Below, piece after piece: positions 3,809 to 61,846 of a stretch of DNA of 64,000 nucleotides (position 1 is the stretch's first letter; each line of letters begins with the position of its first letter). This DNA comes from Octopus sinensis (Eukaryota). The notes beneath the pieces are model-generated. The model ran no database searches. It saw only the letters and a list, made by a program, of their open reading frames with translations, and was not told the origin of the DNA. A program made the translations under genes and the position numbers. The stretch lies in contig NC_043002.1 of assembly GCF_006345805.1 (NCBI RefSeq), forward strand, positions 40,548,001 to 40,612,000, read 5' to 3'.

Positions 3809-3965
3809 ATAGGCTTCTTTCAGTTTCTGTCTACCAAATTCACTCACAAAGCTTTGGTCGGCCTGAGGCTATAGTAGAAGACACTTACCTAAGGTGCCAT
3901 GCAGTGGGACTGAATCTGGGACCATATGGTTGGGAAGCAAACTTGTTATCACACAGCCATGCCTA
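3809..3965 (-). mobile_element. tRNA-derived SINE family A head
   Basis: Reverse complement of ggcatggctgtgtg...ggttcagtcccactg...gaaactgaaagaagcc. At least 8 copies in the window. Confidence 0.85.
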
Positions 3966-4030
3966 TGTATATATATATATATATATACACACAAATACAT
4001 ACATATATGTATATACATACACACACACAC

Positions 4031-4197
4031 ATCATCATCATCCTTTATCGTCCATTTTCTATGCTGGCATGGGTTGGACAGCTTGACTAGAGCTGGAAAG
4101 GAGGAATGCTGCACTATGTTCCAGTCTGATTTGGCTTGGTTTCTATGGCTGGATGCCCTTCCTGATACCACTCTCTTTACAGAGTGTACTGGGTGCA
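4031..4197 (-). mobile_element. RTE 3'-end fragment ((TGA)n tail family)
   Basis: catcatcatc..tccattttctatgctggcatgggttggac matches the 3' end of the RTE at 12600-13435. Confidence 0.8.
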
Positions 4198-4834
<637 letters not shown>

Positions 4835-19263: not shown

Positions 19264-19306
19264 AAACAAAAAAGATGACACTAGAAAAACCAAATATTAC
19301 ATAATG

Positions 19307-19615
19307 AACTTCATTAGCTTACAGTTGTTTCTGCAATAAGATGTGGTGGACTCTTAACTGAGTATCAGGATATCATCCTATAGCTTCATAAGAGCCTTGA
19401 AAACCAAATGCACTTTATTTTTTCCTACCTTGGGATAAAACTTTCCCTATCCATCAACATAAACTTTCTCACTCATGTACCTGTATGTTCTGAAAATGTA
19501 ACTTTTTCAAATAAAGTACACTTCATATTCAAGGATCTGATGAAGCTATAAAATGTTATCTCAACTAAAAGTCCACCACATTTTATAGGAGAAACAGCTG
19601 TAAGCTAATGGAGTT
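19307..19615. repeat. Foldback element with ~90-bp imperfect inverted arms, each with hammerhead-like motifs
   Basis: Arms 19307-19401 and 19528-19615. Plus strand: CTGATGA 19537-19543, GAAAC 19591-19595, GTA 19600-19602. Confidence 0.7.
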
Positions 19616-19882
19616 CTTTACATAACAGTTGGTTTTTCCAGGTCATCTCTTTGTTTTCTTTTACCACTCCATACTCATATAACATTGTGTTCTTGACCAT
19701 ACGTATACTGAGTTCAACACCAGGTTATCAGACTTGCTATGCCTAAGTGAAGTATTTACATACATATACATACATACATACAATTGTTAAACAGGACAGT
19801 AAACATTAAGGCAAGGCAAACATCTCAAGTCAAATACAATATTATTATAGGAAGAAATTCAAAATCTTACAGGAAGAAGTAA

Positions 19883-20279
19883 TCTTTATATATAAAAGAG
19901 AGGTTGTGTGCTGTCTGTCTCCTACGATTTAGATTCCTAACTACTCCCACATTTTGCAGTGCAGTTTAACCAAAACCGGGTATCTTATAGTCGTGATTCA
20001 TATCGAGCCCTTCTGGGTATTAGCGCGCGTCTACGATGAGTCTACGATTTAAAAAAAAAATTACCATCAATTTTTCACATTTTTAATGCATTTTTTGGCA
20101 TATATAGGGGAAGTAACTCTTTAAAAATTTATTATTAAATCTCAGAACGTAAAAAGCTACAGTAACACCCCACCTTTGTGGTTAGCCATATTGAGATGGC
20201 TATTATACTTTACATCTCTAAAAATGCTTATATAGTTATTTCCCTTACAAACCCGAGCAACGCCGGGCGATACTGCTAG
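19883..20279 (+). mobile_element. Non-autonomous Helitron
   Basis: A|TC start, CTAG|T end, subterminal hairpin cccg-agcaacgc-cggg (20252-20267), and no TSD. Confidence 0.85.
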
Positions 20280-20501
20280 TATTGTATATGACTTGAGATG
20301 TTTGCCTTGCCTTAATGCTTAACAATTATATATTCACTGCATTGGAAATCTGCAATGGCTCCATAATTACCACCTCGGCTATAACCTTGGAGCCCCAGTA
20401 GTTTGTTACAGCACTTACCTAACGTACCTAATTGTTCAGATCACCTGTGAACTAAATTCTCATACTTTGTACACACACACACACATATACTTATATATAT
20501 A

Positions 20502-20591
20502 TTGGATCAGCCCATAAATAATGAGTTTTTTTTCAATTGCTTGAACTAAAAGTCGGAGGGGCATATACATACATATATATGTATGTATATG

Positions 20592-20633
<42 letters not shown>

Positions 20634-21912
20634 TGCATATGTATATAGATATATATATATGTATATACATATGTATGTATGTACATATACATACATATAT
20701 ATGATGCAGGTAGTTTATCCCTGCATCACAAACCACCTGCATCAACTTGCTATAAAAGCAGGTAGTAATTTTACCTTAATCTTATTCTTAGTGCAAGTTT
20801 TGAAGAGTGTAGTTCAATTTTAACAGTTATTTTTTCAAAGCAATAATGGAAGTGACAAAGGAACATATTCAGCATATTTTGCTTTATGAGTTCAATAAAG
20901 GCAACAATGCAATGGAAAGTGTGAGGAATATTAATGCAGTATATGGGGATTGGAAAATAAGTGTAAGCCAGTGTCAACAGTGGTTCCAGAAATTATGAGC
21001 CAGAAACTACAGCCTAGAAGAGAAGCCTCATCGTGGAAGGTCTGTAGAAATCAAGAACATCCTGCAAACCCTGGTGGAACAAAATCCCACGTAATTGTTG
21101 AGGAACTAGCAGAGAAGCTTGGATTTGGTCATATATCAACACCTGGAAAAGTCAGCAAATTGTGGGTTCCTCACAAATGTTCTGAGTCTAATTGTGTGCA
21201 GAGAGTGAATGTGTGATCTTCTTTGCAGCCATGTCTCATGAATGAACCTTTTTTGGACTGGATAGTGACTGGAGACAAGAAATGGGTTCTCTATAAAAAT
21301 GCCAAGTGCCAAAGACAGTGGGCAGGGAAAGGAGAAACACCAGCACCTCAGGCTAAAGAAGGTCTTCACCCATGTAAGATGTTGTTATTTGTTTGGTGGG
21401 ATATGAAATGTTTAGCCCACTTGAACTTTCAAACGCCAACCAAACAATAACAAGGGAGATCTACTGCAAGCAGCTTAAGCCAGAGCTAAAAGAAAAATGA
21501 CCATCTTTGCTTTCAAGATGAAAGGTGTGCTTCCATTAGGATAATACTCAGCCACATACAGTGAGGATGACATTCCAAAGGATGAAGCAGTTTGAATGGG
21601 AAACGATGTCCCACCCACCATATTCACTGGACATTGCCCCATCTAATTATCATTTATTCCGCAGTCTTCAAAATCATTTGGACAGAAAAAATATTAATTC
21701 TGTTGACAAGGTCAGAACAGTACTGGAGGAGTATTTTTCATCACGGACAGATGAATTTTGGAAGAGGGGCCTTGCAAGTCTACCAGATAGATGGAAGAGC
21801 ATTGTAGAAAATGAAGGAGAATATATTTTAGATTAAAAAAGAAATTTGTTTTTCTTAATTTTGAAAAATAAAAGAAGTATAAAAAAACCACATTATTTTT
21901 GGGATGACCCAA
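20502..21912 (+). mobile_element. Decayed full-length mariner (DD34D) transposon
   Basis: TA-flanked TIRs (ttggatcagcccataaataatg / cattatttttgggatgacccaa). Motifs WVPH, IVTGDKKW, HPPYSLDIAPSNYHLFRSL. Frameshifted, with a microsatellite inside the 5' region. Confidence 0.95.
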
Positions 21913-22577
21913 TATATATATATATAAAACTAATTTAAAGATGAACCACCATTCCACAACTCAGTCAATGAAGAACCTGTCCAAAACCATGCTGTGAGAC
22001 ATATACCATACAAAATACTAATCTAAAATTTTAATAATATATAATATTGAACAGTAAGATTAATACAATCATATAATATATAAGAGCAAATACTTTTAAA
22101 ATCACAGTGAATACCATACAAAGAAATATTCATCATAAAATTATTAATCTAAAATCAAATAAAGTATAAATTGAACAATAAACAATAATACAATAATATA
22201 ATGTATAAAAGTACATGTATAAAAGTACATGTATAAAAGTAAGTACATGTACACCGACTACGCGCATTTCATGGCTGCATTAGGACTATATAAAATCATA
22301 TAAGCAAACCATATCCAAGTTCATTAGAATGGAAAAATGATTTTACTTCCAAAAGCAGTCACTCCTCAGGTCAAATTCCTAAAAAAACCCTAAAAACTAA
22401 AAGTTTAACTTGCCTCATGATATGATAAGGAATAAAAAATAAGGAAATATATATATATATATAAAGAAACAAAACCTTTAATTTAATCCCTAGGTTAAAG
22501 ACTTTAATATTATTAAAAGTTATGAACTAAAATATTCCAATAGAGTATTATTGTGAACAAGATTAATTCATTATGGA

Positions 22578-26025: not shown

Positions 26026-26068
<43 letters not shown>

Positions 26069-26499
26069 TGTTGTGTCTAAGGAGAGTCCTTCTCTTTTAG
26101 TACCTTATAAATTTAACACTCTCACTGGTAAAATTTCCACTTATTTCTTTCCTTTTTTCTAAAATTTTCATTGCGTCTTGCAACCTTTTCATTAGTTTTG
26201 ACTGTCCATTATTCACACTGCATTCCTTTTTGTTTGTTTGTGTGCATGTGTGTGGCTTAGTGTGTGTGTGTGTGTGCATATACATGCATATGTGTGTGTA
26301 TGCATGTATTTATGTATGTGTCTACATTTGTATGTATGTATTCTGCATATTTATGTGTTTGCGTGTCGGTATTTGTGTGTTTTTATGTATGTGTGTTTGT
26401 ATATGTGTGTGTGTACCTCTGTCTCATTGTGTGTGCATGTCTGAATGTGTGTGTGGATAAGATGCGGATGTTAAGTTGACCCAGGTTGCCTCCATGTTG

Positions 26500-27040
26500 G
26501 TAGAGTATGGATGACTGTCTTTTGTCGTCATATTGTCTCAAATGTTCATTTAGTCATTATGCAATGCTCCTAGATGTCTCTCCTATGTATGCCATGTTCA
26601 TGTCTTTACAAGCACCTTCTATGCATCTGATGCAGTAAACTACAATTCTAGTTCTACAGTTAATACCAGGGCTAATCCTACATACCATGCAGTTATCATT
26701 GGCACATATGGTATTCTCAAAGGAGTACATCCTACATAGTTGTGATCTGATGGAATTTGCTGGCTTTTCAACAATCTTAATGTTGAGTTTGGTCTCCTTC
26801 AGAGCTTTTCTAAATCTACGGGTGAGTTCTCCATGGGCTGTGACATCTACAAACATCACTCCTTGATATTTTTCAGTTTTATACCATGTGTTCACTCTGT
26901 TTGCTTCGTCACAAGTTCTTTGTATCCTATTCCAATCTTTGTTTCTATATCAAGGGCAGGTACCACTGGTATCATTACATATAATGTTATCTAATTTCTT
27001 TCTAGCACCCCTGTATACTCGAACGCTATCTTTCTGATCA
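26500..27040 (-). mobile_element. Penelope-like element (Neptune-like) linker + Zn finger + GIY-YIG fragment
   Basis: NTWYK, C-x4-C-x2-C linker, VVYCIRC..C...YIGETSRS. The clade call is from recall. Confidence 0.85.
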
Positions 27041-27299
27041 TATCACTACATACATAGATGCGTGTATATGTACACACACACTAACCCACACACATGCACA
27101 CAAACAAACAAAAAGGAACGCAGTGTGAATAACTGACAGGGTCAAAACTATTGAAAAGGTTACAAGACACAATGAAAATTTTAGAAAAATAAATAAAGAA
27201 ATAAGTGGAAATTTTACTGGTGAGTGTGTTAAATTAAAAGGCACTAAAAGAGAATGACTCTCCCTAGACACAACAGTATATGCTTCAACATGCAAACTC

Positions 27300-28466: not shown

Positions 28467-29224
28467 CTGAAGGAAAGGATATGCTTTGGTTTCACCTTAA
28501 TTCATGAACTTAGCATGAAACTCTCAAATTTTCAATCAACAATTGCAGACATATATATATATATATCAATACATTAAACTGTAGAATTTATGGTGCTTCA
28601 AAATTACAGGCATGAGTGGTGAGATGTGGGAACGGGGGAAGCAAGAAATGAAAAACAAAAAGTAAAGAAATAGGAAAAAAAAAAACGGTTAAAGAAAATT
28701 AAAGGACAATGAAACTCGGGAACTATTCCATATTAAATAAGATGAAACTAAAGAAGTGTTTTTCTCATATTTCATTTGAAAGAGATATTTTGAAATGCTG
28801 TCCATGAGTAATATTGCATTTAAAATAGTGTATATTTGTGTTTATATATATATATATACACATCATCATCATTTAATATCTGCCTTCTATGTTGGTGTCA
28901 TAAATATGTGTATGGGTGCGTGTAGTGTATGTGTGTGAGTTTGGTTTTAAATATCATATTACTCATGAACATTACCATAGAAATATTCAGCTACACAGTT
29001 AATTTCCATTTATCTCTTATATGTACATATATATGTATATATATATATACATATATATATAAATAAATAGATGTGTGTATTTTTCCCTTGTTAACAATTA
29101 ACATGGGAAAAGTATATAAATAGTTACCAGGGAAGCAAAAAATCACACAAATAAAAAGGTAGAAACTTCGGGTTTAAGTGAAATATTTTGTATAATATAT
29201 ATAAATAATTAAATGGAATTAAAC

Positions 29225-29443
29225 GCAGGTGTTATTCAAATTCTTTTACTTCTGACACATGTTTCGAAGATATCACTGGTATTATTCCAATATATATATT
29301 AGAATGTCTTATTGGCGAGTTTCATTTCTTCACTTCCCTGAAGAGAGGATTACATTGTTTTACACTATTTTATTCCTTTAGAATAATACCAGTGATATCT
29401 TCGAAACATGTGTCGGAAGTAAAAGAATTTGAATAACACCTGC
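29225..29443. repeat. Foldback element, 63-bp inverted arms (29225-29287, 29381-29443), 1 mismatch
   Basis: gcaggtgttattcaaattcttttacttc...tattattc and its reverse complement. Confidence 0.92.
29332..29420 (+). ncRNA. Complete minimal type I hammerhead ribozyme motif
   Basis: Stem I acttcc/ggaagt, CTGAAGA, stem II gaggat/atcttc with G10.1-C11.1, GAAAC, AC-atgt-GT, GTC triplet at 29412-29414. Confidence 0.75.
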
Positions 29444-30121
29444 TTTTAACCACTTTTGCCACTATAATATACCACCAAGTATATTAAAGTCAATATTGTA
29501 CCCTACTTTTGTGTTAGCAGTGTGTTTTCATTTTTAAGTTTATCTGTACATAAACATATTTGTAAATGAAGCATCATAACTTTCAATACTGGCTCTGAAT
29601 TCTACAGAAAATCTGTAGAGATAAACTAACATGCACGCACACACACACACACATGAATGGTCACACACACTAACATACACACATGTGCATACATATAGGA
29701 ATTCTGGTTAGAATAGTCTAAAAAAAAAAAACATGTACTTACAAAAATACAAGGGCAAAATTAGTACTGAATCAGAAATATATAAAAATTCTTGTACAAA
29801 CTGTTAATAACTACTAGTTTTGAATCCAAAAGTTATTCAAACTCTCATCAGGCTGTAGGAACTGTCCATGCCAATGACAGATTAGAATTTGCAAAACAAT
29901 TGTTATGGTTATGCAGAAGTTATCTTTCACTGCATTCAGAAAATTTGAAGTTAAAAGAATATTTTTTTCTTTTAGTATACTTGGAAGGGACTATATGCAC
30001 TTTGGGAAGGAAGTTATCTTCCTTCTCACAGTCTGTATGCATATGTGCATACACACATACACATTTACATGTATACACATTGGCATACAAAAATATCCAT
30101 GAACATGCTAGAGATGTGAAG

Positions 30122-38000: not shown

Positions 38001-38650
38001 CAGCTAAGCTGGAGCACTACTTTGAAGGGTTTTAGTTGAATGAATTAATTCTTTTAAAGCTGGTACTTATTCTATCAGTTTCTTACCGGGATGTAAACAA
38101 ACCAGCACTGGCTGTCAAGCAGTGAGGGGAGACAAACCCAAGCACACATAGATAGATAGATACATACATACATATATTGTGATACTTGGGGATGGTCATA
38201 TTTTGCCAATTAAACACACACACTAAATATTTGGTCTTCACTTCAGCTTTATTATTATTATTATTATTTTAGTTTCTTTGTCAAAGCTCTTTTATTACAC
38301 ATCTTGCGACCTATTCAACAACCCTTTATCCTATATTCTGCTCATTCCATTTTTGACAAAATGGAATAAGCAGAACAAGAGGAAACATGTGGGATAAAAG
38401 GTCATTGAAAAGGTCACAAAATATGTGACAAAAGAGATTTGACACAAAGGAACTAAAATGATAATAATAATAATAATAAAGCTGAAGTGAAGACCAAATA
38501 TATAGTGTGTTTAATTGGCAAAAAATGACCATCCCCAAGAATAACAATATCAGTTTCAACACATGATTTCACATCAAGAATCTTGAAAAACCAAATACAT
38601 ATATATATATATATATATATAATATATATATATATTATATATATATATTT

Positions 38651-38754
38651 ATTTATTATTTTCATACAAAAATGTTGTTGACAGTGACTTTGAAGTTTCG
38701 GCCAGCTAAGCCAAAGTCACTGTCAACAACATTCTTGTATTGAAAATAATAAAT
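38651..38754. repeat. Hairpin with ~42-bp arms and 19-nt loop
   Basis: atttattattttca-tacaaaaatgttgttgacagtgactttg / caaagtcactgtcaacaacattcttgtattgaaaataataaat. Confidence 0.9.
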
Positions 38755-39184: not shown

Positions 39185-39189
39185 TTATA

Positions 39190-39751
39190 TTGGGTTGTCC
39201 AGAAAGTTCGTGCTGATTTATAGTATCTTACCTTTTGACTTATTTTAGAACATGGTTGGGTCCATAAAATGGGATTTGACTACACCTCCATTTAAAGCAC
39301 AGTTTAAGCTATCTTTTTGTGGAAGAAGGTTTATGTTCCTATAACCTGCATTAATTCTGTAACTCTTTAAAATGGAAGATAAGAAAGTTAATTTTCGGTA
39401 CTTGATGCTTTGGGAACCGGACAAAAATTGCTGCAGCTTGGCTGGGATGTGTTACCCCACCCTCCATATTCACCAGATATTGCTCCTTTGGATTTACACT
39501 TATTCAGGACTCTGCAGAATAGTCTTAATGGTAAAAATTTCAATTCCTTGGATGATGTAAAAAGATACCGTGATGAATTCTTTGCCATGAAGCCACCTCA
39601 ATTCTGGGAAGTGGGTATTTTCAAGTTAAAGGAAAGATGGAGACACATTGTGCAACAAAATGGTTCATATTTGGTTGATTAAGAATGTAATGGCAAGTAT
39701 TTATTGACCTTTTTCTTTCCTTTAAAAATCAGCACAAACTTTCTGGACAAC

Positions 39752-39755
<4 letters not shown>
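39190..39755 (+). mobile_element. Internally deleted mariner (566 bp), second subfamily
   Basis: TA-flanked TIRs ttgggttgtccagaaagtt. N-terminal MEDKKVNFRYLMLWE fused to LGWDVLPHPPYSPDIAP...NGSYLVD. Confidence 0.93.
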
Positions 39756-39814
<59 letters not shown>

Positions 39815-43015: not shown

Positions 43016-43604
43016 GTGCATGTTATGTGTGTGTGTGTGCGTGTGTAAATATATGTAAATATATATAAACATGTGTATACACACTATTATAATTGCCTTA
43101 TTTGATAATGAAAATACTTTATTTTCTGTGTTATTTTAGTAGTGAGATAATTTTCTTCTTTAAAAAAAAAATCTTTATTTTTTTTTTGTCTTGTTTCTAA
43201 AAAAAATCACTTAAATTGTATTGTAAATAGATTAACAAGAAAAGTAATGAAGGAAGAAAATATATCAGAAAAAAAAAGAAAAGCACAAAAAGAAATCATT
43301 GAAAAAAAAAATGGAAGAAAGAATAAAGAGACAGAAAAAAGAAAGAGAGAAAGAAAAAGCAGTTTTAGAGGAAATTATGTTGAAATGCAAGAAACACTGG
43401 AGTATGAAGTTAGAAGAATTAACTTCAGCAATACAAAGTCATTTATATGGAGAGAACCAAAATAGAACATTGTTGTTTTCCCAAAGTTATTAAATGTTAA
43501 TAAAAATGGATTCTTTGGTTATTATTATTTCAGTATACATCCATATATAAACATATATATATTTATATTCATATATATATATATATAATTTTTTTTTTAC
43601 TTAC

Positions 43605-43675
43605 TGCAATCTTTTCACATATCGATTTGCTATCATAATTTCTGCAAGAGTACATTCCAATTTTCCAAGGAAGTC
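43605..43675 (-). CDS. CPNE8: Copine exon (71 nt), DFLGKLECTLAEIMIANRYVKRL, transcript-downstream copy
   Basis: Acceptor atttcttattgatttcattgcag, donor GTAAGT. Matches copine C2A DFLGxxxCTLGEIV. Confidence 0.9.
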
Positions 43676-45198
43676 CTGCAATGAAATCAATAAGAAATGA
43701 CATTGTGAGATTAGTGATCTCAGAAGAAGACTGATGACAAATATGCGACAGCAATTTTTCTGGCATTGTTTAAGAATAGCAAGCAGGATAAATGTCTTTG
43801 TAAATTCTGTCACAGCAATGTCCCTTGACTGTGGCATGGCAGTTAGATTGTTAGATTTCTGGTTGCTCAAAATAGGTGCAATCTTAAGAAAGAAGCCAAG
43901 AATTTTTACTCCAGTTCTTTAATCTTTCTAAAATAGCACAAACTATTTCTGCTTTAAGATACACATTCTGTTCTTTAAAACAAGAAATATTGCTGGAAGG
44001 TCTTTCCAGTCATTACTCATTTTGTAAAGAAACGCTGTATATAAACAGAGTGTATAAATACTGCTCATAAACAATGTGCCTAAACACTTCTTGTTTTATA
44101 TTCCCCCCCCCCATTGATAACTAATTATTTTACTAACATACTGGCAGCAGCGGTGGTGGTAGCAGCTTTATCTCTTTTCCTTCTTTGCTGAACGCTTTCT
44201 TTATGCTAATACTGTTGATGACTCTGGAGACCAATTCTTGCATAAAAGAGTGAATGGCATTGACTGCATGGCAATGTTGGTGGAGGGTGAGGTTGATTTT
44301 TTTGAACTTCTCTCTCCTGTTGTTTGACAGGATAACTAATATATACCATTAATTTAATTACTTAACTACACATACATACAGGAAATACATAAATCTAATG
44401 GTTAGGTTCAGACTACAAAAACCTCAACATGACATTGACATTTTCTCCTGCTGTAGCAACTGTGCTAGAATTCAGCCAACATAAAGTCATTATTTTGCAA
44501 CACATATTAGCTTCATTGATATTTGCTATGTCTCTTAGCAACAATTTTCTAATTCTTGGAACCAATCATAATAGTTATTATGAATACCAAATTTTGTATA
44601 AGTAAAAATTGGATTGATATTACCCTCTTTGTTTTATTTTGGCCCTATTAGACGGAAAACAAAGGACAGAATTTAGAGCCATTCTAGGCCCTCCTGTACT
44701 GATAGGGCTGGATTAAAGTCTAAGCACAGTCCAACAGTGGTTAACCCATGACCTTTCCATTGATTAACTGACAAGTTATTGAGACATAATTGAAATGATT
44801 GATTAATAAGCAATTTTTTCCTCCAAACCATCCAATAAGCCAAATTCCACACTTATGATTGATTGATTCTAGTTTCAGCTCACGAGCTGTGGCCATGCTG
44901 GGGCACCGCCATTATGTACATATATACATACAAACATACATATCTATATGTACACACACACATGCACATACATACACACAAATAAATACATGTGTGTGTG
45001 AGTTTAGAAGGATATATTATATGGGTGGATATTGTGGTAGCTTTCAGCTATGTTCCAGCCAAGCTGGTTGAAAGATCCTGAACAAAGCTGCACAGAAAAT
45101 CATGCCGGGTTGCTTGTGCAACAGCGCATACTCTATACAGTGGAAACACATGATGATGATGATGATATATATATATATATAATTTTTTTTTTACTTAC

Positions 45199-45269
45199 TG
45201 CAATCTTTTCACATATCGATTTGCTATCATAATTTCTGCAAGAGTACATTCCAATTTTCCAAGGAAGTC
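45199..45269 (-). CDS. CPNE8: Copine exon (71 nt), identical transcript-upstream copy
   Basis: Same sequence and splice sites, inside the duplicated unit. Confidence 0.8.
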
Positions 45270-47059
45270 CTGCAATGAAATCAATAAGAAATGACATTGT
45301 GAGATTAGTGATCTCAGAAGAAGACTGATGACAAATATGCGACAGCAATTTTTCTGGCATTGTTTAAGAATAGCAAGCAGGATAAATGTCTTTGTAAATT
45401 CTGTCACAGCAATGTCCCTTGACTGTGGCATGGCAGTTAGATTGTTAGATTTCTGGTTGCTCAAAATAGGTGCAATCTTAAGAAAGAAGCCAAGAATTTT
45501 TACTCCAGTTCTTTAATCTTTCTAAAATAGCACAAACTATTTCTGCTTTAAGATACACATTCTGTTCTTTAAAACAAGAAATATTGCTGGAAGGTCTTTC
45601 CAGTCATTACTCATTTTGTAAAGAAACGCTGTATATAAACAGAGTGTATAAATACTGCTCATAAACAATGTGCCTAAACACTTCTTGTTTTATATTCCCC
45701 CCCCCCATTGATAACTAATTATTTTACTAACATACTGGCAGCAGCGGTGGTGGTAGCAGCTTTATCTCTTTTCCTTCTTTGCTGAACGCTTTCTTTATGC
45801 TAATACTGTTGATGACTCTGGAGACCAATTCTTGCATAAAAGAGTGAATGGCATTGACTGCATGGCAATGTTGGTGGAGGGTGAGGTTGATTTTTTTGAA
45901 CTTCTCTCTCCTGTTGTTTGACAGGATAACTAATATATACCATTAATTTAATTACTTAACTACACATACATACAGGAAATACATAAATCTAATGGTTAGG
46001 TTCAGACTACAAAAACCTCAACATGACATTGACATTTTCTCCTGCTGTAGCAACTGTGCTAGAATTCAGCCAACATAAAGTCATTATTTTGCAACACATA
46101 TTAGCTTCATTGATATTTGCTATGTCTCTTAGCAACAATTTTCTAATTCTTGGAACCAATCATAATAGTTATTATGAATACCAAATTTTGTATAAGTAAA
46201 AATTGGATTGATATTACCCTCTTTGTTTTATTTTGGCCCTATTAGACGGAAAACAAAGGACAGAATTTAGAGCCATTCTAGGCCCTCCTGTACTGATAGG
46301 GCTGGATTAAAGTCTAAGCACAGTCCAACAGTGGTTAACCCATGACCTTTCCATTGATTAACTGACAAGTTATTGAGACATAATTGAAATGATTGATTAA
46401 TAAGCAATTTTTTCCTCCAAACCATCCAATAAGCCAAATTCCACACTTATGATTGATTGATTCTAGTTTCAGCTCACGAGCTGTGGCCATGCTGGGGCAC
46501 CGCCATTATGTACATATATACATACAAACATACATATCTATATGTACACACACACATGCACATACATACACACAAATAAATACATGTGTGTGTGAGTTTA
46601 GAAGGATATATTATATGGGTGGATATTGTGGTAGCTTTCAGCTATGTTCCAGCCAAGCTGGTTGAAAGATCCTGAACAAAGCTGCACAGAAAATCATGCC
46701 GGGTTGCTTGTGCAACAGCGCATACTCTATACAGTGGAAACACATGATGATGATGATGATATATATATATATATATCAGGCATTATATTGTTAAATATGT
46801 TTTCCCTTTATTTAAATGACAGGATGGTATTTGAGGGAAATTTGGCTGCTATTTGTGGCAAGTCAAGCAGCCTCATAATTGCTCCTTCATTGGTTTAGCG
46901 TAATGCTGCCATGTTGTTTTTTGGATGAATAATATTAAATGACAATGATGATGAACACTCAAAGACTATGGAAGCTTAATGTGGAGAGAATGGACAATGA
47001 AAAAATGAATACAAATATGTTAGTGGTCGATTGTTGTTGTCATTAATGGCAGTGGAGTG

Positions 47060-51900: not shown

Positions 51901-52410
51901 CCAATAGATATGCCATTAACTATCACCTAAATTAAAAGGTATTCTTAAAGGTTCTTGTAGTTTAACTCCAGGTTAATGTTGGATAGGCAGATCTAAATTC
52001 AAAGGTGCTACAATACTCATGCTTTTTTAAGTGTATAAAAGACTTCATTTTCTAATGTGATCTTACTCTTTTAATACAGAAAAATGTGATTTGAGGGAAA
52101 CTTAACTAATATTTCTAGCAGGACAACTGTCTGCATTGAAACTCATTGGCTTATCTTGTCAAGGGACAGTTAACAGGTGATAAACTGGAATGTGTTTATG
52201 TATAGGGTGTATCTGTAGCATACACACACAAACACAATTACGTATGTATGTATGTTCATGTCTTGCCTCCTGCGTACAATCTACTGAACAAACAAATATT
52301 CCAAGAAAGTGTTCTTCAAACTAAAACAGAAAAACTAAGACATTTTAATATTTTTTTTCTAGAGAAGTTACAATTTCAAATAAACACAAATTAGAAATGG
52401 CTTTACTTAC

Positions 52411-52450
52411 ATGTTTATCCAAGTTTGCACTTTTGCAATCCACATCATAA
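52411..52450 (-). CDS. CPNE8: Copine exon (40 nt), YDVDCKSANLDKH
   Basis: Acceptor cattctttttttctattacag, donor GTAAGT. Phase 0 end joins DFLG. Matches copine YDVDSKSPNLSKH with the Ca2+-ligand aspartates. Confidence 0.92.
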
Positions 52451-54850: not shown

Positions 54851-54929
54851 ATAACAATAATAATAATATTAACCATAAATATCGCCTGGCCTTTTGTTGT
54901 TTTTTATTATTTGTATTTGCTTTGATATA

Positions 54930-55100
54930 CATCATCATCATCCTTATCTAACATCCGTTTTCCATGCTGGCATGGGTTGGATGGCTTCATAGGAACTGGT
55001 AAGTCAGAAGACTGCACCGAGTTCTGCTGTCTGTTTTGGTATGGTTTCTATGGTACAATGCCCTTCCTAATGACAATCACTTTACAAAGTGTACTGGATG
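54930..55100 (-). mobile_element. RTE 3'-end fragment
   Basis: Family motif. Confidence 0.7.
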
Positions 55101-55383
55101 CTTTTTACAAGGCAGAGACAGGGGGGGGAAGAGAGTGTGAGAGAAATAAAGAGGTGGTGACGGTGAGTAGGCTGGGGATTAGAAAGGGTGAGTGGATGAG
55201 TTCACGAGATTGTAAAAGGAGAGTGGTAGATGGAGGGCAGTTGTAATGAGTAGGTGGAAGGATGGAGTATTGGGAGGTTATGTTGTGGGCCAGGTTTGTT
55301 GGTAGGGGAGAGGAGAACAGATTGTGCGCAGGAGGCAAGACATGAACATACATACATACAAACATATATATATATATATATAT

Positions 55384-55628
55384 ATAAGAGGCATTAGCCA
55401 TCTGAATATGGCTAGGGACAGGGCAGGGTGGTGGGGGTGTTACTGTTGCATTTAGCCCCAGGCGAACATCAACGTCACCAGAAAGGCTTGACACCATCAC
55501 GGCGTTCTCTCGTGATGTTGTCAAGCCTTTCTGGTGACGTTGATGTTCGCCTGGGGCTAAATGCAACAGTAACACCCCCACCACCCTGCCCTGTCCCTAG
55601 CCATATTCAGATGGCTAATGCCTCTTAT
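55384..55628. repeat. Near-perfect hairpin, 118-bp arms, 9-nt loop
   Basis: 55384-55501 pairs with 55511-55628; single mismatch 55494/55518. Confidence 0.97.
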
Positions 55629-55714: not shown

Positions 55715-56215
55715 TGATCCCCTTCGGTCAAGAATGACCATGGGATTGCACCTAGAAAGTTACCCTCAGCGGCACAAGTCTGGCAAGGTTGTTTATGGAA
55801 GACCAGCAGTTGCCCATGCATACCACCCTCCTCTCTCCATGCCATCAATGTTATCCAAGGGAAAGGCAAAAGCCGATACATCTTGGCACCAGTGACATTG
55901 CAGCTCATTTATTAACGTGCAAGTGGCCGAGCATTTCACAGACACGTGCACCCTTAACATAGTTCTTGGGGAGATTCAGCATGACACAGAGTGTGACAAG
56001 GTTGGTCCTTTGAAATACAGGTACAACAGAAACAGGAAGAAAGCATGAGAGAAAGTTGTGGTGAAAGAGTACAGCAGGGTTCACCACCACTCCCTGCTGG
56101 AGCCACATGGAGCTTTAGGTGTTTTTGCTCAATAAACACTTACAATGCCTGGTCTGGGAATTGAAACTGCGATCCTACAACTGCAAGTCCGCTTCCCAAG
56201 CTACTGGGCTATGTG
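55715..56215 (-). mobile_element. Composite tRNA-derived SINE with the CORE/V-family tail
   Basis: 55715-55880 is the reverse complement of the 15720-15900 tail; tRNA-like head near 56215. Confidence 0.7.
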
Positions 56216-61628: not shown

Positions 61629-61846
61629 AGAGAGAGAGAGAGAGAGAAAGAGTGTTTGAAGTGGTGTACAGATATTGCATATTGAGAAAAAGAGGCAGTC
61701 AGAATTTTGGATAATTCTTACTTAGTTCATTTAACCAAAGTCTTCAAGGCAAAAATTATTTTGGTTTTAATTTTTATCTTGAAGACTTCAATTAAATGAA
61801 TGAAAGTGCTAATAAGGACCAACCAACCAACCATCCATCCATCCAT

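What the first reader, a model, noticed from the sequence alone, without database searches (positions are those of the whole stretch)
55384..55628. Near-perfect 245-nt GC-rich hairpin 2.9 kb upstream of the 40-nt exon
Seen: 117/118 paired bases, a 9-nt loop, GC content well above background, TA at both ends, and no similarity to other repeats in the window. It folds on both strands. Inference: a very young foldback MITE (TA|AGAGGC termini) or a hairpin-RNA/endo-siRNA locus, and an ideal ADAR/Dicer substrate inside the copine pre-mRNA. Such palindromes are usually unstable, so it is either recent or maintained.
Basis: partly seen in the sequence, partly recalled or inferred. Interest (0 to 1): 0.7.

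Follow-up and report, generated by a model that had tools for sequence, protein, structure and literature searches.

The report
Near-perfect palindromic MITE-like insertion
The 245-base, almost perfect DNA palindrome is real, but it is most likely a young "foldback" miniature transposon of a kind that occurs several more times, in older decayed form, in the same 64 kb, so it is an ordinary type of element that stands out only for its perfection and GC-richness.

Summary
Arms 55384-55501 and 55511-55628 pair at 117 of 118 positions around a 9-nt loop. The fold is about -248 kcal/mol on either strand (z = -34). GC is 52% against 34% for the window, and TA sits at both ends. I found no known RNA family, no protein-coding origin, and no match in plasmid, phage, viral, prokaryotic or metagenome collections.

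In the window the arm has one partial relative, about 60 nt inside a 522-bp TIR element at 19.8-20.3 kb. The window also holds at least four older whole-length palindromic elements. Two mariner-family elements have all four ends against (TA)n runs, as the hairpin's left end does.

My best reading, at about 50%, is a young, low-copy palindromic non-autonomous DNA transposon with a TA target. It lies 2.9 kb 5' of a 40-nt copine-type micro-exon, which is on the minus strand. Rivals are an in-situ inverted duplication at the (TA)n tract (about 20%), an assembly artefact (about 15%) and a selected hairpin-RNA or editing element (about 5%).

Copy number, empty sites, reads, small RNAs and editing could not be tested, because the source genome is not in any collection on hand. 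Interest is low.

The parts
55384..55501 (.). Left arm of the palindrome (118 nt). It contains a sub-hairpin TAGCCAT..ATGGCTA (55395-55414) and a G-quadruplex-type run GGGACAGGGCAGGGTGGTGGGGG (55415-55437).
55502..55510 (.). Central 9-nt spacer/loop GCGTTCTCT
55511..55628 (.). Right arm (118 nt), the reverse complement of the left arm except T55518, which lies opposite C55494
55385..55386 (.). Candidate left TA target-site duplication. It is ambiguous because it is also part of the (AT)n run and of the palindrome.
55626..55627 (.). Candidate right TA target-site duplication (ambiguous)
55364..55386 (.). (AT)11A microsatellite that runs directly into the left end of the palindrome; (ACAT)n precedes it
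52411..52450 (-). 40-nt exon-like segment with acceptor ttttttctattacag, donor GTAAGT and peptide (x)YDVDCKSANLDKH, a copine C2-type motif. The hairpin lies 2934 nt 5' of it on this strand.
   Evidence: the copine resemblance comes from my own recollection of copine sequences, used as the query
20151..20203 (-). The only partial relative of the arm in the window. It shares the two-block motif ACAGTAACACCCC..TAGCCATATT and lies inside a 522-bp element with 45-nt TIRs (19800-19844 / 20277-20321).

Best explanation
This is a young, low-copy, whole-length palindromic non-autonomous DNA transposon: a foldback-type MITE made of two 116-118-nt terminal inverted repeats around a 9-nt centre. It inserted at a TA at the edge of an (AT)n microsatellite, in what is probably a large 5' intron of a copine-like gene transcribed from the minus strand.

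Inferred mechanism: a transposase supplied in trans, of the Tc1/mariner kind or another TA-targeting kind, binds the arm termini and cuts and pastes the unit into TA. The element has no function of its own. If the host transcript runs through it, either orientation folds into a 118-bp dsRNA stem. That stem would be hyper-edited by ADAR and might affect local splicing or editing. At the DNA level it can extrude a cruciform or hairpin, so it should be prone to deletion.

Shown: the structure, its composition, its boundaries and its context. Inferred: mobility, age (1 mismatch in 118, so recent) and every RNA-level consequence.
For: - The palindrome is real and far beyond chance.
- It is a discrete block: GC 52% against 34%, the top 1.4% of windows. 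Its edges are sharp, at TA on both sides.
- It shows no coding origin. The word-index search found nothing. The exhaustive HMMER search gave only two hits inflated by repeats in the targets. Pfam found nothing.
- It matches no RNA family and nothing in plasmids or phages.
- Its left end abuts a (TA)n run exactly. A random boundary does that with probability of about 0.0015 per side. All four ends of the two mariner-family elements in the window also abut (TA)n runs.
- The same 64 kb holds at least four other whole-length palindromic elements: 38174-38550, 19281-19641, 38659-38745 and 61726-61800. There is also a 72-nt-TIR MITE at 29219-29449. At least two of these are TA-flanked. Palindromic MITE-like units are therefore a regular component of this genome.
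- About 60 nt of the arm is related to the interior of another TIR element, which ties the arm sequence to this genome's repeats.
- Made1/mir-548 shows the same architecture at a smaller scale (PMC1784062).
Against: - There is no second copy in 64 kb, and none in any collection I could search. None of those collections holds the source genome, so this is weak evidence.
- The TA duplication is not diagnostic. TA is self-complementary, and the left flank is (AT)n anyway.
- The termini do not resemble the TIRs of the mariner elements or other TIR elements in the window.
- Its GC-richness sets it apart from the other, AT-rich, palindromic elements.
- A 100%-identical 1.6-kb tandem duplication 9-10 kb away shows that either (TA)n-bounded rearrangements or assembly errors occur in this stretch.
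Confidence: 0.5

Rival explanations
1. This is an in-situ inverted duplication and not a transposon. Replication stalled or broke at the (TA)n tract. The nascent strand folded back at the short CACG...CGTG inverted repeat beside the loop, copied 118 nt of native sequence in reverse, and rejoined at TA/T microhomology. Under this reading one arm is original sequence.
For: - The left end lies exactly at an (AT)11 run.
- The only other near-perfect repeat in the window, a 1611-bp 100%-identical tandem duplication, is also bounded by (TA)n tracts. (TA)n-associated rearrangement may therefore be active here.
- No other copy of the arm is present in the window.
- The arms end in a 4-nt inverted repeat around the 9-nt loop.
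Against: - Both edges of the GC-rich block coincide with the ends of the palindrome. If one arm were native, a 118-nt GC-rich island would have to end exactly at the microsatellite.
- Several other whole-length palindromic elements of different sequence in the same window point to a recurrent mobile class rather than to one-off accidents.
Confidence: 0.2
2. This is an assembly or sequencing artefact: the second arm, or the whole insert, is not in the animal's genome.
For: - A 100%-identical 1611-bp tandem duplication lies 9-10 kb away. It duplicates a 71-nt exon-like segment, which would shift the reading frame, so it looks like an assembly error.
- The region is dense in microsatellites: dinucleotide SSRs make up 5.8% of bases. 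Consensus errors are common in such sequence.
Against: - A fold-back chimeric read gives A-B-B'-A'. Here the flanks beyond the palindrome differ: microsatellite on the left, 48 nt of unique sequence on the right.
- There is a 9-nt spacer and one mismatch between the arms, which a simple strand-switch copy would not produce.
- The sequence matches no plasmid or phage record, which covers cloning vectors. From my memory it matches no common adaptor.
- The arm sequence occurs nowhere else in the window, so there is no nearby source from which it could have been mis-copied.
Confidence: 0.15
3. This is a selected RNA element, either a hairpin-RNA/small-RNA gene or an intronic duplex that recruits ADAR to the copine transcript as an 'editing inducer'. 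On this reading its perfection is maintained by selection or by arm-to-arm gene conversion. This is compatible with a transposon origin.
For: - The stem is 118 bp and folds on either strand.
- It lies 2.9 kb 5' of a micro-exon on the gene's strand.
- Palindromic MITEs have become miRNA genes (PMC1784062).
- A distant intronic duplex can induce exon editing (PMC3479170).
Against: - No Rfam family reaches threshold. The best is mir-2010 at 27.9 bits against a gathering score of 66.
- There is no covariation or conservation data at all.
- If the animal is a mollusc, Dicer processing of long dsRNA was not detected there (PMC12479628).
- A 99% perfect stem is what a young neutral insertion looks like. 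Selected hairpins usually carry bulges and G-U pairs.
Confidence: 0.05

Closest known systems
Made1 MITEs / hsa-mir-548 (human, mariner-derived)
   Same: Both are whole-length palindromes built from two TIRs around a few internal bases, and both form a very stable hairpin when transcribed (PMC1784062). By my own knowledge of Made1, it also has TA target sites.
   Different: Made1 is 80 bp (2 x 37 + 6), has thousands of copies, has a known autonomous relative (Hsmar1) and gives documented miRNAs. This element is 245 bp (2 x 118 + 9), only one copy is seen, and it has no known partner and no RNA data.
Stowaway-type (Tc1/mariner-mobilised) MITEs
   Same: Both are small, non-coding, TA-flanked, have TIRs and are often found in introns. 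In this window the mariner-family elements likewise sit against (TA)n runs.
   Different: Stowaway TIRs are short and resemble those of the partner transposon. Here the TIRs make up the whole element and do not resemble the window's mariner TIRs.
Foldback (FB) elements
   Same: Both have very long inverted arms with little or nothing between them, and both are prone to rearrangement.
   Different: FB arms are built from tandem subrepeats and are usually kilobase-sized (my own knowledge). Here the arms contain no internal tandem repeats.
Long-inverted-repeat hpRNA loci (Drosophila, plants; LIRBase)
   Same: Both are inverted repeats that would give a long hairpin RNA.
   Different: LIRBase requires arms longer than 400 nt, precisely to exclude MITE-type repeats (PMC8728187). 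Small RNAs are untested here, and a mollusc survey found no dedicated endo-siRNA pathway (PMC12479628).
Intronic inverted-repeat dsRNA as ADAR substrate / Gabra-3 editing-inducer duplex
   Same: Both are long intronic duplexes, the class of structure that ADAR hyper-edits (PMC9989829) and that can boost editing of a nearby exon (PMC3479170).
   Different: The known duplexes are conserved or are formed by two separate repeat copies. The Gabra-3 element lies 150 nt from its exon, not 2.9 kb. No expression or editing data exist here.

Membership tests
MITE (non-autonomous TIR DNA transposon, TA-targeting type) | Terminal inverted repeats at both ends | tested here: met
   The arms are 118 nt and 117 of 118 positions are complementary.
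MITE (non-autonomous TIR DNA transposon, TA-targeting type) | Small size and no coding capacity | tested here: met
   The element is 245 bp. The ORF through it has no true homologue and no Pfam domain.
MITE (non-autonomous TIR DNA transposon, TA-targeting type) | Target-site duplication (TA) | tested here: inconclusive
   TA is present at 55385-6 and 55626-7. However, TA is self-complementary and the left flank is (AT)11. No longer direct repeat flanks the element.
MITE (non-autonomous TIR DNA transposon, TA-targeting type) | Multiple dispersed copies (a family) | tested here: not met
   Within the 64-kb window there is only a 59-nt partial relative. Genome-wide copy number cannot be tested because the source genome is in none of the collections. 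The window result does not settle the feature.
MITE (non-autonomous TIR DNA transposon, TA-targeting type) | Termini shared with an autonomous transposon | tested here: not met
   The termini score no better than shuffles against the TIRs of the two mariner-family elements and three other TIR elements in the window. A genome-wide test was not possible.
MITE (non-autonomous TIR DNA transposon, TA-targeting type) | Empty site in an allele, paralogue or sister species | not testable with these tools
   No genome or reads are available. The left flank's paralogue at 52242-52282 diverges inside the microsatellite.
Foldback (FB) element | Arms composed of tandem subrepeats | tested here: not met
   There are no direct repeats longer than 6 nt inside an arm.
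miRNA or other described RNA family (Rfam 15) | Score at or above the family's gathering threshold | tested here: not met
   There are 0 matches at gathering threshold in the whole window. The best sub-threshold hit is mir-2010, 27.9 bits against 66.
hpRNA / endo-siRNA locus | Long inverted repeat able to form a hairpin | tested here: met
   The arms are shorter than the 400-nt criterion of LIRBase.
hpRNA / endo-siRNA locus | Transcription and Dicer-sized small RNAs from the arms | not testable with these tools
   No RNA data are available. Literature on molluscs argues against a dedicated pathway, but the organism was not identified by any tool.
ADAR hyper-editing substrate | Long, near-perfect intramolecular duplex within a transcript | tested here: inconclusive
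   The duplex is shown. Its location inside a transcript is only inferred, from copine-like exon segments on the minus strand. No upstream exon was found in the window.

The most novel reading that the evidence does not exclude
The hairpin is kept nearly perfect because it works. On this reading it is an intronic duplex that recruits ADAR to the copine pre-mRNA in a heavily editing animal, as an editing or splicing inducer for the downstream micro-exon. Alternatively it is a newly born hairpin-RNA gene that arose from a palindromic transposon.
Probability: 0.04. Interest if true: 0.6.

Novelty: new member of a known kind. Interest (0 to 1): 0.2.

Why it matters
If it is a young palindromic MITE, it is a useful marker of recent or ongoing DNA-transposon activity in this genome. 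It would also be a natural test case for how a perfect 118-bp intronic dsRNA is handled (editing, splicing, innate sensing) in an animal that probably edits RNA heavily. On present evidence it is one more repeat insertion in a repeat-rich intron. Its main practical value is as a check on assembly quality in this microsatellite-dense region, alongside the suspicious perfect tandem duplication nearby.

Tried and rejected
**Known RNA.** Rfam gave nothing at gathering threshold over the whole window and only generic sub-threshold miRNA-hairpin hits locally. ARAGORN found nothing.

**Vector, plasmid, phage, viral or bacterial origin.** BLASTN against plasmids and phages gave no match. Exact-pattern scans of viral, prokaryotic and metagenome contigs gave nothing, apart from one chance 21-mer hit in a coding-looking metagenome contig, L001.

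**Arm derived from a protein-coding gene.** The word-index search was empty. The exhaustive HMMER search returned two hits that only reflect repeated weak matches to internally repetitive proteins.

**Independent assemblies of the locus.** Exact look-up of the two ORFs that run through the hairpin found nothing on record.

**Identifying the species.**
- Transposon ORFs gave either no hit or only 40-47% hits.
- SINE strings were not found in papers.
- My octopus guess rests only on my recollection of the SINE families seen.

**Copine domains by Pfam.** Concatenated ORFs from 33-64 kb gave no family. The sensitivity of that trick is unproven. Regexes for copine vWA motifs found nothing.

**Helitron reading of the 20-kb relative.** I dropped this once 45-nt TIRs were found.

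**Other target-site and origin readings.** hAT (8 bp) and PIF/Harbinger (TWA) duplications are not present around the hairpin. I also considered a parvovirus-like ITR or telomere hairpin, but the flanks contain no viral genes and the viral-contig scans found nothing.

Full report
**Observation.**
The arms are 55384-55501 and 55511-55628, each 118 nt, and are complementary at 117 positions. They are separated by GCGTTCTCT. The one mismatch is C55494 opposite T55518. As RNA the + strand folds at -248.0 kcal/mol and the - strand at -247.6. Dinucleotide shuffles give -77.5 +/- 5, so z is about -34 and none of 200 shuffles comes close. As DNA the value is -158.8 kcal/mol. GC is 52.2% in a window of 33.8%, and only 1.4% of 245-nt windows are that GC-rich. 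CpG observed/expected is 0.42 against 0.26 for the window, which is not unusual: 20% of windows are as high. The only canonical G-quadruplex motif in all 64 kb lies in the arms (55415-55437 on +, mirrored at 55575-55597 on -). Each arm also holds a small sub-hairpin, TAGCCAT..ATGGCTA. The palindrome starts ATAAGAGGC and ends GCCTCTTAT.

**Surroundings.**
The window is animal-like DNA: AT-rich, strongly CpG-depleted, with 5.8% dinucleotide microsatellite and many interspersed repeats. The hairpin's left end runs straight out of an (ACAT)n(AT)11 microsatellite at 55364-55386. On the right come 48 nt of single-copy sequence, then (TA)n(TG)n, and then a repeat with copies at 61.0 and 15.7 kb. Another interspersed repeat lies at 54925-55120. 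No tool identified the species. The protein database holds no close relative of any transposon ORF tried. From memory, the SINE-like repeats at 3840-4300 look like those of octopus genomes. I flag that as recollection, not as a result.

**The gene.**
It has a pyrimidine-rich acceptor (ttttttctattacag), a consensus donor (GTAAGT) and the peptide (x)YDVDCKSANLDKH. Further down the same strand, a 71-nt segment with good splice sites encodes DFLGKLECTLAEIMIANRYVKRLQ (45199-45269). Both resemble the start and end of a copine C2A domain. The comparison used a copine sequence typed from my memory, and the tblastn E-values (about 3) are not significant alone. The colinearity and the splice sites make it credible.

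Pfam found nothing in concatenated ORFs of 33-64 kb, but I could not show that this trick is sensitive. The micro-exon starts in phase 1, so a coding exon must lie upstream. I found no candidate in 52.45-64 kb, so it is probably beyond the window. The hairpin, 2934 nt 5' of the micro-exon, would then be intronic. This is likely but not shown.

**What it is not.**
- No Rfam family reaches threshold. Locally the best hits are generic miRNA-hairpin models at less than half their gathering scores.
- It does not derive from a recognisable protein-coding sequence.
- It matches nothing in plasmids or phages (so no vector) and nothing in the viral, prokaryotic or metagenome contig collections. The one exception is a chance 21-mer hit.
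- It is not a simple fold-back chimera, because the flanks beyond the arms are unrelated to each other.

**What relates to it.**
Inside the window the arm has one partial relative. Arm nt 11-71 match 20203-20151 (BLASTN 74.6% over 59 nt, E 4e-5; nhmmer E 4e-4). The match shares the two-block motif ACAGTAACACCCC..TAGCCATATT, which occurs three times in the window against zero in shuffles; the pattern was derived from these same sequences. That relative lies in the interior of a 522-bp element with 45-nt TIRs (19800-19844 / 20277-20321). The arm sequence therefore belongs to this genome's repeat vocabulary, although the two elements are not one family.

The structural context is more telling. 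A minus-strand self-comparison shows that whole-length palindromic units are common here (with for the last):
- 38174-38550 (377 bp, nested arm blocks 79-98% complementary, 4-nt centre, TA at both ends)
- 19281-19641 (arms 81-83%)
- 38659-38745 (34-nt arms, 91%)
- 61726-61800 (33-nt arms, 85%)
- a 72-nt-TIR MITE at 29219-29449

Two mariner-family elements are present. One is at about 20503-21911, with an HTH_48 domain at E 1.7e-17. The other is an internally deleted copy at 39188-39757. All four of their ends abut (TA)n runs. Only about 0.15% of positions abut such a run on a given side.

**Best explanation (about 50%).**
It is a young, low-copy, whole-length palindromic non-autonomous DNA transposon that integrated at a TA at the edge of the microsatellite. 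It has the Made1 architecture on a larger scale (PMC1784062). One mismatch in 118 implies that the arms diverged recently, or are homogenised by conversion; that is an inference.

It needs no function. If it is transcribed within the copine-like pre-mRNA, it would form a 118-bp duplex. That is the class of structure ADAR hyper-edits across metazoans, octopus included (PMC9989829). Processing into siRNAs is doubtful if this is a mollusc (PMC12479628).

The weak points:
- No second copy has been seen.
- The TA 'duplication' cannot be told from palindrome extension.
- The termini are unlike the window's mariner TIRs.
- Its GC content is unlike that of the other palindromic elements.

**Rivals.**
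- In-situ inverted duplication by fold-back or template switching at the (TA)n tract (about 20%). It is favoured by the microsatellite junction and by a second (TA)n-bounded perfect rearrangement nearby.
- Assembly artefact (about 15%). That nearby rearrangement is a 100%-identical 1611-bp tandem duplication that doubles a 71-nt exon-like segment, so it looks like an assembly error and lowers trust in this stretch. The hairpin's unrelated flanks, spacer and mismatch argue that it is real.
- A selected hairpin RNA or ADAR-recruiting duplex (about 5%, compatible with a transposon origin). PMC3479170 shows that distant intronic duplexes can induce editing, but nothing here speaks for selection.

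**Verdict.**
I classify it as a new member of a known kind. Interest is low (0.2).

Noticed in passing
window 43571-45181 and 45165-46775: A perfect tandem duplication: 1611 bp at 100% identity, period 1594, with both copies starting in (TA)n AATTTTTTTTTTAC. Each copy carries a 71-nt copine-like exon segment on the minus strand (45199-45269 and 43605-43675). Duplicating that segment would shift the reading frame, so this is either a very recent event or an assembly error.
   Followed up: partly
window 52411-52450 (-) and 45199-45269 (-): Two exon-like segments with canonical splice sites carry copine C2-type motifs: (x)YDVDCKSANLDKH and DFLGKLECTLAEIMIANRYVKRLQ. The gene therefore runs on the minus strand. 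No upstream start exon was found in the window.
   Followed up: partly
window 38174-38550: A 377-bp whole-length palindromic element: nested arm blocks 79-98% complementary, a 4-nt centre, TA at both ends, AT-rich. It is an older structural analogue of the finding.
   Followed up: partly
window 19281-19641; 38659-38745; 61726-61800: Three further short-spacer palindromic units, with arms of 82, 34 and 33 nt at 83, 91 and 85% complementarity. Palindromic MITE-like units occur about once per 13 kb in this window.
   Followed up: partly
window 19800-20321: A 522-bp element with 45-nt TIRs (93%) and a possible 8-bp duplication, ACAATTGT/ACAATTAT. Its interior holds the only partial relative of the hairpin arm. 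Its 3' part ends ...CCCGAGCAACGCCGGGCGATACTGCTAG, which at first looked Helitron-like.
   Followed up: partly
window ~20492-21922 and 39188-39757: Two mariner-family elements. One is about 1.4 kb with a broken ORF and an HTH_48 domain (E 1.7e-17). The other is internally deleted, about 570 bp, with TIR TTGGGTTGTCCAGAAAGTT... All four ends sit against (TA)n runs.
   Followed up: partly
window 29219-29449: A 231-bp MITE-like unit with 72-nt TIRs (96%) around an 87-nt centre.
   Followed up: no
window 26063-27281: An element of about 1.2 kb with roughly 240-nt inverted ends (87%). It encloses a 130-aa ORF on the minus strand (26560-26949) that ends ...YIGETSRSIA, which looks GIY-YIG-like by eye. 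There was no Pfam or database hit.
   Followed up: partly
window 55415-55437 (+) and 55575-55597 (-): The only canonical G-quadruplex motif (four G3+ runs with loops of 7 nt or less) in the entire 64-kb window lies in the hairpin arms.
   Followed up: no
window 3840-4300, 54925-55120, 55720-55910 and copies: Several SINE-like families have 3-6 copies each in the window, often next to (TA)n(TG)n tails. From memory they resemble octopus SINEs. No tool or paper search confirmed this.
   Followed up: partly
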